Source: Diadema antillarum
Taxonomy: Eukaryota
Assembly (NCBI RefSeq): GCF_040938485.1
Contig: NW_027271444.1
Location: forward strand, 248,001 to 312,000
DNA length: 64,000 bases
Direction: 5' to 3'
Shown: piece by piece, positions 12,291 to 21,000 of the stretch
How positions within the stretch are numbered: the stretch's first letter is position 1
Layout: the number at the start of each line of letters is the position of its first letter
Position numbers and translations under genes: made by a program
The notes under the pieces: generated by a model
Seen by the model: the letters and a program-made list of their open reading frames with translations, nothing else
Database searches by the model: none
What the model was told of the DNA's origin: nothing

Positions 12291-13005
12291 TTATGAAAGA
12301 CAGAGATGGCTTAAAATTGCAATATAGAAAGTTAACGCAGTCTACCAAAAGCACGCTCAAAAATTTGCCTACGTTGTTCTGTTATCAATGCTTTTCAATA
12401 TGTTCATCTCAAATTTATCGTTAATCAGAATGAAACAGCTTCATAAAGATCCTCCTCATTCTAATTTTAGGCACATTAAAATGATTAAATGTTATATTTC
12501 TCCTGACTAATACAAAGTGAAAAATGTTGTACCACAATCCTCTAAAAAGATAAGCTACATATCATTTCCTATTACCTCTCGGCAGATGAGATATTGTGCG
12601 GGTGACTATCAATAAAAATAATGTATAGTCTTCATTCTTCAACTCTAAGTTACACATTAATTGCTCGATGACAGTAAAACATGAAGACAATCGGGCACGT
12701 TGTTGCTAGGCTACGTCTTCGCACAAGAAAACCAAAGCACAGCATAAGATTCGCGCGCGTTTCGACGCAAGAGACCCAGCCAGCCAATCACAAGACGATC
12801 TCTACCGCCAGTCTCCTCCCAACTCATTGAATCGGTCATCAGTCGAGCACAGTCTGGCTGCATATCTTTGCGGTTTTGTTTTTGTCTGCTTATATAAGAG
12901 ATACATTAAGTGCATAATGTTCGAATATGTGCAGTAAATGATTGACGAGCTTGTAGAGCAGAGATAAAGCCAAAACATAGTTCTCGTATGTCTGCAGAAC
13001 TGTCG

Positions 13006-18088: not shown

Positions 18089-21000
18089 CTGTCGATTATT
18101 GCTCGAAAATGTACACGTACTGATGCATAAGAAATGTTTGAAATAACACTGTAATAACACGATTTCAGTTGGATGGCAACTAAAATGCGAAATATCACAC
18201 GAAAAGGTTCGTCAGAACTCAACAGTCTCATAGCTTTCCCCACCGTGGTTGCTTCGTAAATTGTCATGATCGATTATCGGTAATCGACGAATCGAGAACC
18301 AGCGATATCCCTCGATCTTCCGCGCTAGAGTGAATCGCATGTAGCTTATTGGAAAATACGATTGCGAGGATATGATCGATCATCACGTTACGTTCTACCT
18401 TCCCACAATGCTGAACCCGGAGTTAACGGACAGGACGGGGAGGGCTCTTCTGGAATAAAAGTCATGTACTACGATCGACATTATTCTATACTTTTGATCT
18501 CAGAACACTCCAGAACAGCTCATCATCCTGGCAAATTGCGTCAGTCAGTTAAGTTTCTTGGTAGACCCTTTCGATGTATTGGAAGCAAATTCCATACGAC
18601 GAATATAAATTTCGAGCCCTTATGTTTTGGCTTTAAGCTGGGTCAGCGCAAAGTAACTGGAAACTGACAAAGAGGCAGAACATATTTTTGTTTTCGGAAT
18701 TTGTCATTGAAGGGGGGGGGACATGTAAGTGTCTGAGGGTGTCAGACCCACTCACGAAAAAAAAAACTCCTCTAAAAACAGAGTGAAAGGAAACAGACTG
18801 GTTAGGGAATTTTGCAGACTAAAGAAACCAAAAACATCTTGGTTCAATCTGCCCAGGAACATCCCCACTCTGCTAACTTTATGTGATCATCACTTTCATC
18901 ACCCTCCGTTGAAATATTTGCTGCTATAGAGGGACAATATAATCATTGGCCTCTAACGCTATAAAAAATCCACGTGTGTGGTTTCTATACATCTTATCTA
19001 CATAAGATGTGAACTGTCTGCTAATCTCTTCTTTGGGCGAGTATCATTATTTTGATCGGTTGCGTCGCGGAATATCATCCGTGAAAGTTTGGCTCTTAAT
19101 AACAATTTCCTTGAAAGCTACCACATGTATACAATCGTCAGTATCCGAGACAATAATTACTTGCTATCAGGATTCTGCTTTGGACAGCTGTCGAAAGTGT
19201 AAAAATTGGGTTTGCCCTTTAATCTTCTGTGATTTCTGAAGTACATAATAAGTGGAGCAAAGGGAATGATAAAGTATAGGATCAACCCATTTACTTTCTA
19301 TTTTCTCAGTGGAAGTGAATAAATAAGTGATTTTTTTTTCATGGCAAAATGTAAAAATGGCAATTATGTTTGTTTGATGTACTTCATTCTAGAGGTTTCT
19401 GCAGAACTTTAGAATAATCACGTGGTTGTACTGTTTGACCAACACTTACATTGTAATATTTGAAAATCACTCTGAAGACTGAACAATAACGCAAGCACGG
19501 AAAGAAAGGAACTTTGCGTACAGTTGGCATAGTAATAGTTAAATGATGACATCTCATTTTTTTTTTGAGGGGGGGGGATAATCAATCATTAGATTTTGTA
19601 AGATAATTATAGAAGAAGTGTACCATATTACAATTCTAAAATGATAGTAAGAACTGAAATTGTTGATGTGATCTCAAAATACTTTGTTTCGCCATTCCTA
19701 CAACCGAAATGAATAAAAAGAAGTGAGTATATCTATGAGATATTTCATCAGGTTCTACTTTGTATTCACTCTAAAAAGCGCTATGTGCATTTTCTTTTTC
19801 ATCATTTAGAACATGTCAAAGTGTTGCTTACAGGTGAAATTCCACTTGCCGCTCGTAGGCCTATATATACATCTTCACAGTTTGCCCGGGAAGAATTATT
19901 TTGTAACTCGCTCCTTTTTTACGTCTGAAAACTCGTCGAATTCAAACTGAGTAGCGCAGAAGAGGCGTCGTTGTCTTTCATTATGAATATATCTCCCTTG
20001 GCGAGCAGCTCGCATCCGCTGATGGATGGTCTAGATTGAACACACGCCCGTACCTTTAACAGTATGACGCCAATGGAAGTCACAATATACGTATACTTGT
20101 CCCTGAGGGCGTGCGTCCGTAATAAGGAGTGGAGCGGTCGGCGTGGTCCTGCAGATCAGAGCGAACACAATATTATACAGGTGTAAACATTCGGGTGCTC
20201 AGGGAGTTGGCGCTAATATATCTCCTTGGACGACACTGACGTAGAACGCGAAGTTACGAGCATACAGACGGATTGAGCTTCCATTAAACAACCAGTCATT
20301 TTCTCGACATGCTTTGAATGTAGCTTTGTACATTATGCATTTCATATTCATCTTTGCTAGAAAACGGGCACATTCGTCACAAGTTCTTAACTTGTAGAGA
20401 TGTGCCCCCTGCGTGTTCAAATTGATTGCATCGTTATCTGTACTTATGTTTATTAATGTTTGCTAGAAATTTAATGTCGTAGAATTGAAGTGAACTGAAC
20501 ATTGTACCAGGTAAAACACTATAATAGCAAAGTTGACTTTACACAGAAGAGTGGACAGTGGACAGTGATTTTTTTTCTTTATAATCTGACCAAATAGTGC
20601 AAATAAAAAAGGACTGCGGAAGCTCAAGAATGGTCTAGATAACCTTCACAAAGTATGAAGAGTGTGAACATGACATTGCCCCGTGAGGCTGGCGAACATG
20701 AGGCAGCCTTGACTCCCGTTTCACACGGTAGCACGCAAAGAGTATCAGTGACCGTGATGAATTTCACGTGATGTATTCTATTACAGCCACCGCGCCCTGC
20801 TCACCTTCTTACCTCCTTCCGACCGTGGATAGACCAGTTCTTTTAAACCTACTCAGCGCCAGAGTTTAATAAGGTTTGCAGAATTACAAGGGGCTAGTTG
20901 GATCGCTCAAGTGTTCTTTTCGTCATGTATTATTATATCTTCATTTCCAGTGCGCAGGATCGAATTTGACTATCACGGGGCACTATGATCAATCCAACAT

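What the first reader, a model, noticed from the sequence alone, without database searches (positions are those of the whole stretch)
13000..18094. 5-kb satellite-filled fold-back transposon with IS3EU-type ends (TAC..GTA, 6-bp TSD)
Seen: the 53-bp array is enclosed by 154-bp TIRs (one mismatch) that extend beyond an internal TTAA to TACGG...CCGTA, flanked by the exact direct repeat CTGTCG. About 98% of the element is tandem repeat and there is no transposase. Established: in the Repbase classification as I recall it, TAY..RTA termini with 6-bp TSDs define IS3EU, a little-studied eukaryotic DDE superfamily. Inference: this is a young, non-autonomous IS3EU-type element whose subterminal transposase-binding motif expanded into a kb-scale minisatellite, so it may act as a mobile satellite-seeding vehicle. 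The terminal 65 bp already contain degenerate versions of the unit motif (GACGAGATAAGAAGACGAGAAGAC).
Basis: partly seen in the sequence, partly recalled or inferred. Interest (0 to 1): 0.78.

Follow-up and report, generated by a model that had tools for sequence, protein, structure and literature searches.

The report
Sea-urchin fold-back transposon, IS3EU-type ends
A 5.1-kb stretch of the sea urchin Diadema antillarum genome is a protein-less "fold-back" jumping gene built almost entirely of a 53-base repeat, and its ends and 6-base target duplication fit the little-studied IS3EU transposon group; it is a tidy new example of a known kind of element.

Summary
At window 13006-18088 lies a 5083-nt element flanked by the exact direct repeat CTGTCG. 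It ends TACGG...CCGTA, and its first 154 nt match the reverse complement of its last 154 nt with one mismatch. About 97% of it is roughly 93 copies of a 53-nt unit. It is a true fold-back: the arms pair over 983 nt at 91%, and unit orientation runs +24/-4/+22/-4/+22/-17. A 1383-nt block that holds the hairpin centre is repeated exactly 2.4 times. This is either a very recent duplication or an assembly error.

The window is D. antillarum contig JBFRCO010000556.1. Related copies occur in metagenome contigs that carry echinoderm-like DNA. All end at ...CCGTA (one allele mutated to CCTTA) with unrelated flanks, and two lie inside or against other copies. The internal TTAA is not conserved. The same 20-nt terminus also caps elements with different interiors.

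Published IS3EU families make 6-bp duplications and end TAYGG..CCRTA, which fits exactly. No transposase or autonomous partner was found, and only this copy shows both ends. The superfamily call is therefore a good inference, not proof. The satellite-seeding idea is untested. Interest is moderate to low.

The parts
13000..13005 (.). Left copy of the 6-bp target-site duplication, CTGTCG
   Evidence: Read directly. It is identical to 18089-18094. The chance of a 6-nt match at fixed positions is 1 in 4096.
13006..18088 (.). Whole fold-back element, 5083 nt, ending TACGG...CCGTA
   Evidence: The flanks 12000-13005 and 18089-19100 are unique in all DNA held.
13006..13076 (+). Left terminal domain outside the array. 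It holds the conserved outer 20 nt and the octamer CGAGATAA at 13036-13043.
   Evidence: Alignment of 11 ends. The octamer occurs in the element only in the two terminal domains. As a single strand it has no notable fold.
13006..13159 (+). Left 154-nt near-perfect terminal inverted repeat; its partner is 17935-18088
   Evidence: One mismatch, at position 8, in 154 nt.
13077..14343 (+). Outer left arm: 24 units of 53 nt in + orientation
   Evidence: It pairs in register with the right arm over 13005-13987 against 17107-18089, 983 nt at 91%.
13960..17325 (.). Region of exact 1383-nt periodicity: a partial copy at 13960-14559 and two identical full copies at 14560-15942 and 15943-17325. Each full block holds 22 + units, a hairpin centre and 4 - units.
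   Evidence: Offset-1383 identity is 100% across the region. The breakpoint was read at 14559/14560. The first 784 nt of the block match nothing in the outer left arm better than 92.5%. This is either a very recent duplication or an assembly error.
14344..14355 (.). Hairpin-centre loop 1, 12 nt, where units switch from + to -
15727..15738 (.). Hairpin-centre loop 2, identical to loop 1
17110..17121 (.). Hairpin-centre loop 3, the true centre between the last + run and the right arm
   Evidence: Arms 16214-17109 and 17122-18017 lie 12 nt apart. The stretch 16860-17360 folds as one hairpin at -240 kcal/mol, z-score -43.8.
17122..18017 (-). Right arm: 17 units in - orientation, with a 159-nt (three-unit) higher-order period
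18018..18088 (-). Right terminal domain outside the array, with CGAGATAA at 18051-18058
   Evidence: It is nearly identical to the end of the metagenome contig L008.
18089..18094 (.). Right copy of the target-site duplication, CTGTCG

Best explanation
This is one insertion of a multi-copy, non-autonomous fold-back DNA transposon in Diadema antillarum. It encodes nothing. It consists of two roughly 70-nt terminal domains and two inverted arms of 53-nt tandem units that meet at a 12-nt loop.

The most likely mechanism is cut-and-paste movement carried out in trans by a DDE transposase of the IS3EU/GingerRoot lineage encoded elsewhere in the genome. That enzyme would recognise the conserved outer 20 nt or so, and probably the nearby CGAGATAA block. 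It would cut exactly at the TA ends and make a 6-bp staggered cut at the target.

Once inserted, the arms change length by unequal exchange and replication slippage. The palindromic centre favours inversions, one-armed deletions and block duplications such as the 1383-nt block here.

Shown: the anatomy, the exact boundary, the 6-bp duplication, several copies in unrelated contexts, and conservation of the terminus and of the 53-nt period in at least one other echinoderm-like genome.

Inferred: the transposase family, any binding role of the repeats, and the rearrangement pathways.
For: 1. Boundary and duplication.
2. Multi-copy family with the same end and unrelated flanks: L002 carries two ends, one nested in the array of the other; L008; L009 has one end abutting a second copy that lacks its first 10 nt; L001 and L012 are alleles of a one-armed copy.
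3. The outer 20 nt recur exactly, or with one change, on elements with different interiors: L003, L004 and L006.
4. Literature on the signature: IS3EU has TA..TA ends and usually 6-bp duplications (PMC10045372). Fungal IS3EU has 6-bp duplications, inverted repeats over 30 bp and ends TAYGG..CCRTA (PMC12730594). GingerRoot has TA..TA ends, 100-150-bp inverted repeats and mostly 6-bp duplications, and occurs in marine invertebrates (PMC6839031).
5. No coding capacity.
6. Unit length 53 is kept, and the commonest base is the same in 48 of 53 columns, in a second echinoderm-like genome.
7. Hairpin energetics.
Against: - No transposase of any kind was found in the window, in 122 scanned ORFs, or in any fetched locus. 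The superfamily therefore rests on end sequence and duplication length alone.
- Only this copy shows both ends, so the 6-bp length has a sample of one.
- The TAYGG..CCRTA comparison is with fungal families. No echinoderm IS3EU end could be compared, because Repbase and Dfam are not available here.
- The empty site was not seen in the second haplotype or in D. setosum.
- The exact 1383-nt repeats could be an assembly artefact. The assembly is hifiasm on about 11x HiFi reads with a mean length of 6.8 kb.
Confidence: 0.7

Rival explanations
1. It is a fold-back transposon moved by a transposase of some other superfamily, known or undescribed, and the IS3EU-like ends are a coincidence of 5 nt.
For: Classification rests on 5 terminal nt and one 6-bp duplication. 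No partner was found. The fold-back shape has arisen independently in several superfamilies (discussion in PMC4079207).
Against: The best-known fold-back families make 8-10-bp duplications: Tetris and the Mutator-type elements. From memory, FB makes 9 bp, Galileo 7 bp and sea-urchin TU 8 bp. An 8-bp reading fails here (AACTGTCG against CTGTCGAT). Both the TA..TA ends and the 6-bp length match IS3EU/GingerRoot.
Confidence: 0.2
2. The real element is only about 2.3 kb. The two extra identical 1383-nt blocks, and with them two of the three hairpin centres, are an assembly artefact in a palindromic repeat.
For: Identity is 100% over 2.4 periods. The assembly has low per-haplotype HiFi depth, reads of mean length 6.8 kb, and both haplotypes retained.
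Against: HiFi reads can span 5 kb. The breakpoint at 14559/14560 is clean, and the block's first 784 nt are not a copy of the outer arm, which a simple assembler loop would not produce. Rearranged copies also occur in independent contigs.
Confidence: 0.25
3. It is a piggyBac- or Kolobok-type element whose true ends lie at the internal TTAA.
For: TTAA is present at positions 10-13 from each end.
Against: The inverted repeat and the between-copy conservation run 9 nt beyond the TTAA, to the TA ends. Flanks diverge only after CCGTA. The tetramer reads TATAA in L002 and L003. The sequence flanking the element is not TTAA.
Confidence: 0.01
4. It is not a mobile element. It is a local palindromic satellite made by inverted duplication, and the CTGTCG repeat is chance.
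For: Only one two-ended copy was seen, and no empty site.
Against: The same terminal domain ends at the same nucleotide next to eight unrelated flanks in other contigs. One of these lies inside a 23-nt satellite and one inside another copy's array. The terminal 31-mer occurs only at the two ends in the window, with 0 expected by chance.
Confidence: 0.02

Closest known systems
IS3EU / GingerRoot superfamily of eukaryotic DDE transposons (Repbase; Kojima and Bao 2023, PMC10045372; Kojima 2025, PMC12730594; Cerbin et al. 2019, PMC6839031)
   Same: TA..TA termini; the specific TAYGG..CCRTA end reported for fungal IS3EU families; a 6-bp target duplication; terminal inverted repeats of 100 nt or more; presence in marine invertebrates.
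   Different: No transposase is seen here. The body is a tandem-repeat fold-back rather than a gene-carrying element. No end-to-end comparison with a curated IS3EU family could be made.
Fold-back elements: Drosophila FB, Galileo and Tetris, and sea-urchin TU elements (Tetris paper PMC4079207; TU and FB details from memory)
   Same: Very long inverted arms made of short tandem repeats; little or no middle domain; most copies non-coding; variable arm lengths; one-armed and rearranged copies; a link to satellite-like arrays.
   Different: Those families make 7-10-bp duplications and are assigned to the Mutator or P superfamilies. This one makes 6 bp with TA..TA ends. I could not retrieve the TU papers to compare sequences.
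Tandem-repeat-carrying DNA transposons and satellites in bivalves, for example the Crassostrea gigas satellites CgiSat35 and CgiSat47, annotated as similar to IS3EU (PMC8268682)
   Same: Tandem repeats associated with IS3EU-like sequence in a marine invertebrate.
   Different: Those are satellite monomers of 690 and 129 bp with a Repbase similarity label. No fold-back architecture or defined ends are described in the text I read.

Membership tests
IS3EU/GingerRoot | 6-bp target-site duplication | tested here: met
   CTGTCG on both sides. Readings of 7 and 8 bp are excluded because the terminal A is present in all other ends. This rests on one two-ended copy.
IS3EU/GingerRoot | TA..TA termini (TAYGG..CCRTA in the fungal families described) | tested here: met
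   TACGG..CCGTA in the window. The same end is seen in L002 (twice), L003, L004, L006, L008, L009 and L012. Literature.
IS3EU/GingerRoot | Terminal inverted repeats (over 30 bp in IS3EU; 100-150 bp in GingerRoot) | tested here: met
   154 nt with one mismatch, and 983 nt at 91%.
IS3EU/GingerRoot | An autonomous partner with the same ends that encodes a DDE transposase of the IS3EU/GingerRoot clade | not testable with these tools
   No tool searches the Diadema genome by DNA. There is no transposase in the window or the fetched loci. Scans of the prokaryotic and viral collections for the terminus found nothing.
IS3EU/GingerRoot | Repbase rule for non-autonomous elements: same duplication length, and the first 11 terminal nt align with at most one mismatch to a classified family | not testable with these tools
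   The rule is quoted in PMC4455052.
Fold-back elements (structural class) | Long inverted arms built of tandem repeats, a small or absent middle domain, and no coding capacity | tested here: met
Mutator-type or P-type fold-backs (FB, Tetris, Galileo) | Target duplication of 7-10 bp | tested here: not met
   6 bp here.
piggyBac / Kolobok | TTAA target duplication with element ends flush against it | tested here: not met
   The ends extend 9 nt beyond the internal TTAA, and that TTAA is not conserved.
Polinton/Maverick derivatives | 6-bp duplication together with AG..CT-type termini (termini from memory) | tested here: not met
   The duplication length fits. The termini are TA..TA, not AG..CT.

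The most novel reading that the evidence does not exclude
The 53-nt unit is not junk expansion. It is a conserved array of protein-binding sites: the period is kept exactly, and its AACTCGG/AAGTCGACTTG core is nearly invariant, across echinoid-like genomes. On this reading an IS3EU-type transposase loads cooperatively on the array. The family would then insert preferentially into its own copies (two nested or abutting cases among the few contigs seen) and seed hairpin-prone satellite blocks in sea-urchin genomes. It would be the first fold-back lineage of the IS3EU superfamily.
Probability: 0.15. Interest if true: 0.55.

Novelty: new member of a known kind. Interest (0 to 1): 0.35.

Why it matters
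IS3EU/GingerRoot is one of the least-studied eukaryotic DDE superfamilies, and about 30% of the D. antillarum genome is unclassified repeat. A cleanly bounded non-autonomous family with a conserved 20-nt terminus gives annotators a handle for finding the rest of the family and its autonomous partner in echinoderms.

It also adds a case to the view that fold-back architecture arises independently in different superfamilies. It gives a concrete example of a transposon that carries kilobase-scale arrays of short tandem repeats. The long perfect hairpins are also a practical warning for assembly and for structural-variant calling in these highly heterozygous genomes.

Tried and rejected
1. Autonomous partner: none found.
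- Pfam on 122 window ORFs of at least 65 aa found only a Ras exon.
- ORFs in the interiors of L003 and L004 show nothing coding.
- Exact scans for the 20-nt terminus found 0 hits in the prokaryotic genome collection and 0 in the viral collection.

2. Empty site: not reached.
- The D. setosum locus (L007) and both D. antillarum haplotigs (L010, L011), fetched through the Rhes-like gene, all stop about 25 kb short of the element.
- A look-up of the nearest ATG ORF, 11355-11669, found no called gene.
- The neighbouring 248-aa GRAM-domain gene might span the site. Looking it up needs its spliced product, and joining the exons was left out.

3. The large representative-protein search was not used.

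4. Rfam and tRNA scans of the window found nothing.

5. A literature search for the terminal string returned only primers. The sea-urchin TU-element papers could not be retrieved.

6. L005, one hit of the metagenome scan, is a chance match inside phage-like coding DNA.

7. Disclosure: to find other copies I used three short IUPAC search patterns of 16-20 nt that cover the observed variants of the terminus. Column conservation was reported as shares only.
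Full report
**Observation**

The feature is real and sits at the stated coordinates.
- CTGTCG lies at 13000-13005 and again at 18089-18094. The element between them (13006-18088, 5083 nt) starts TACGG and ends CCGTA.
- An ungapped comparison of the left end with the reverse complement of the right end gives a mismatch at position 8 and the next at position 155. The '154-bp TIR with one mismatch' is therefore exact.
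- Tandem Repeats Finder reports a 53-nt period with 75.9 copies at 13077-17109 and 17.2 copies in the opposite orientation at 17106-18017.
- A 19-mer taken from a real unit (13088-13106) occurs 93 times with up to 3 mismatches, all inside the element; 0.02 hits are expected by chance.
- The array makes up 97% of the element.
- The terminal 31-mer occurs only at the two ends in the 64-kb window.
- The flanks are unique in all DNA I hold.

**Anatomy**

This is a genuine fold-back, not a one-way array with short inverted ends.
- The arms stay in register for 983 nt at 91% (13005-13987 against 17107-18089).
- Unit orientation along the element is +24, -4, +22, -4, +22, -17.
- The switches come from a 1383-nt block that holds 22 + units, the hairpin centre and 4 - units. 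The block is present as two identical full copies (14560-15942 and 15943-17325), preceded by an identical partial copy (13960-14559). Identity at an offset of 1383 is 100% over the whole 13960-17325 stretch.
- The breakpoint can be read at 14559/14560.
- The first 784 nt of the block match nothing in the outer left arm better than 92.5%, so the history is more than a simple copy of the neighbouring arm.
- There are three identical centres with 12-nt loops (14344-14355, 15727-15738, 17110-17121). The last one folds as a single hairpin of -240 kcal/mol over 501 nt, z-score -43.8.
- Without the extra blocks the fold-back would be about 2.3 kb. I give this as a size only and built no sequence.
- I cannot tell whether the exact blocks are a very recent duplication or an assembly error. 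The assembly is hifiasm on about 11x HiFi reads with both haplotypes retained (bioRxiv 10.64898/2026.05.24.727502).
- Each end has a domain of about 70 nt outside the array. Within it, 13039-13055 resembles a stretch of the unit at 15 of 17 positions, and 4 of 1000 shuffles reach that score. The octamer CGAGATAA lies 31-38 nt from each tip and nowhere else in the element.
- Within the unit, the most conserved columns are those covering AACTCGG and AAGTCGACTTG in the instance at 13353-13405. The inner TCGACT is invariant in all units.
- The ORFs in the array are frame artefacts: no Pfam hit reaches its cut-off.

**Source and context**

- A Ras-family exon at 53647-54252 (-) is 98% identical to a Rhes-like protein of Diadema setosum. 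Its cluster mate is from D. antillarum.
- The window is 100% identical to D. antillarum GCA_040938485.1 contig JBFRCO010000556.1, with record coordinate = window + 248000.
- A second contig, JBFRCO010000651.1, is the other haplotype at 98-99% identity.
- D. setosum aligns at 82-91%.
- None of these loci reaches the element.
- The window is gene-poor. 122 ORFs outside the array have no Pfam domain, and there is no Rfam family or tRNA.
- A 248-aa GRAM-domain gene ends near 46479 on the + strand and runs towards the element. I could not establish whether the element lies in one of its introns.
- Looking that gene up would need its exons joined.

**Other copies**

Using an array ORF as a protein query found four 'proteins' called on metagenome contigs. 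The contigs carry the same family.
- L002 has two right ends reading ...GCTTCCGTA. One lies inside the array of the other, and the outer one lies inside an unrelated 23-nt satellite.
- L008 has a degenerate array and a terminal domain almost identical to the window's.
- L009 has one end abutting a second copy that lacks its first 10 nt. That second copy is a small fold-back of 4 + and 5 - units with no right terminus.
- L001 and L012 are two alleles of a one-armed copy next to a galactose-3-O-sulfotransferase gene. The best named relatives of that gene are echinoid proteins at about 50% identity.
- In those two alleles the period is again exactly 53, and the commonest base agrees with the window's in 48 of 53 columns. 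L012 ends CCGTA, and L001 carries a point change to CCTTA.
- A scan of JGI metagenome contigs with a 20-nt pattern for the terminus found three more ends (L003, L004, L006). They share the outer 20 nt but have different interiors. A fourth hit was a chance match.
- In every case the flank diverges immediately after the terminal A. The internal TTAA reads TATAA in L002 and L003. The boundary is therefore at TA, not at TTAA.

**Classification**

- Kojima and Bao state that complete IS3EU families always have TA..TA termini and usually 6-bp duplications, and that IS3EU and GingerRoot form one lineage (PMC10045372).
- Kojima (2025) describes fungal IS3EU families with 6-bp duplications, inverted repeats over 30 bp and ends TAYGG..CCRTA (PMC12730594). 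TACGG..CCGTA is an exact instance of that pattern.
- GingerRoot has TA..TA ends, inverted repeats of 100-150 bp and mostly 6-bp duplications, and has relatives in coral, oyster and fish (PMC6839031).
- All testable defining features are met.
- The decisive features could not be tested here: an autonomous partner with an IS3EU-clade DDE transposase, or an 11-nt end match to a curated family (the rule in PMC4455052).
- My confidence that this is a non-autonomous fold-back transposon is about 0.95. My confidence that it belongs with IS3EU/GingerRoot is about 0.7.

**Mechanism**

- Shown: exact ends, a 6-bp duplication, many copies, nested insertions, variable arm lengths (from 4-5 units to more than 40), and one-armed and rearranged copies.
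- Inferred: mobilisation in trans by an IS3EU-type enzyme that binds the conserved outer 20 nt and perhaps the CGAGATAA block; arm growth and shrinkage by unequal exchange; and hairpin-driven deletions and duplications.
- The idea that the 53-nt unit is an amplified binding site is attractive, given its conserved core and fixed period across genomes. It remains untested.

**Rivals**

- A different superfamily remains possible (0.2).
- The TTAA-end reading and the 'not mobile' reading are effectively excluded.
- An assembly artefact for the internal blocks is a live side issue (0.25).

**Novelty**

Three things are already known:
- fold-back elements with tandem-repeat arms;
- links between transposons and satellites (PMC4079207);
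- IS3EU-labelled satellites in oyster (PMC8268682).

What may be new is a fold-back family carrying the IS3EU signature in echinoids. I file it as a new member of a known kind, with moderate to low interest.

Only short degenerate search patterns for the terminus were used, and they are disclosed under Tried and rejected. All next steps are descriptive. A test of mobility is not proposed.

Noticed in passing
window 1-64000: The window is Diadema antillarum GCA_040938485.1 contig JBFRCO010000556.1, positions 248001-312000. A second contig, JBFRCO010000651.1, is the other haplotype at 98-99% identity. The Rhes-like gene spans 58.6 kb there against 49.0 kb here, so the haplotypes differ by roughly 10 kb of insertions or deletions.
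   Followed up: partly
window 53647-54252 (-): Last exon of a Rhes/Dexras-like small GTPase gene (Pfam Ras, E 8e-15). It differs by one residue in 190 from the D. setosum protein. The annotated gene spans 45-59 kb in both Diadema species, running away from the element.
   Followed up: yes
window about 43647-46479 (+), extending to lower coordinates: 3' part of an annotated 248-aa GRAM-domain gene. It may extend towards the element. Whether the element is intronic is unresolved, because joining the exons to look the gene up was left out.
   Followed up: partly
window 40017-41132 and 43229-44073: Two other tandem arrays, unrelated to the 53-nt unit: 322 nt x 3.5 copies and 158 nt x 5.4 copies. 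There is also a (TCGTCCG)n run at 39912-40008 and a TG microsatellite at 58523-58641.
   Followed up: no
L001 1809-6894, against L012: A 5.1-kb insertion bounded by 152-nt identical direct repeats sits inside the 53-nt array in one allele (L001) and is absent from the other (L012, same sample). It is a young polymorphic insertion with no Pfam domain on record, perhaps a non-autonomous LTR-type element.
   Followed up: partly
L002 1326-2031; L009 1-140: Copies of the family lie inside or directly against other copies: one end sits within another copy's array, and one end abuts a copy that lacks its first 10 nt. This could reflect self-targeting or simply clustering.
   Followed up: partly
window 13036-13043 and 18051-18058; also L001/L012, L002, L004, L006 and L009: The octamer CGAGATAA lies 30-50 nt inside the tip in nearly all ends, including elements with different interiors (not in L003). 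It is a second conserved block beside the outer 20 nt.
   Followed up: partly
L003 865-975: An element with the same outer 20 nt carries a different subterminal repeat of about 27 nt. That repeat shares the short string CGACTTG with the 53-nt unit.
   Followed up: no
L002 1-73 and 2032-2178: A 23-nt satellite flanks the composite insertion in this TARA-labelled contig. The contig also holds an internal direct repeat of about 80 nt (about 617-700 and 1158-1240).
   Followed up: no
L001 8236-8245, against L012: The element tip reads CCTTA in L001 and CCGTA in the allelic L012. This is a single-base change in the terminal pentamer.
   Followed up: yes
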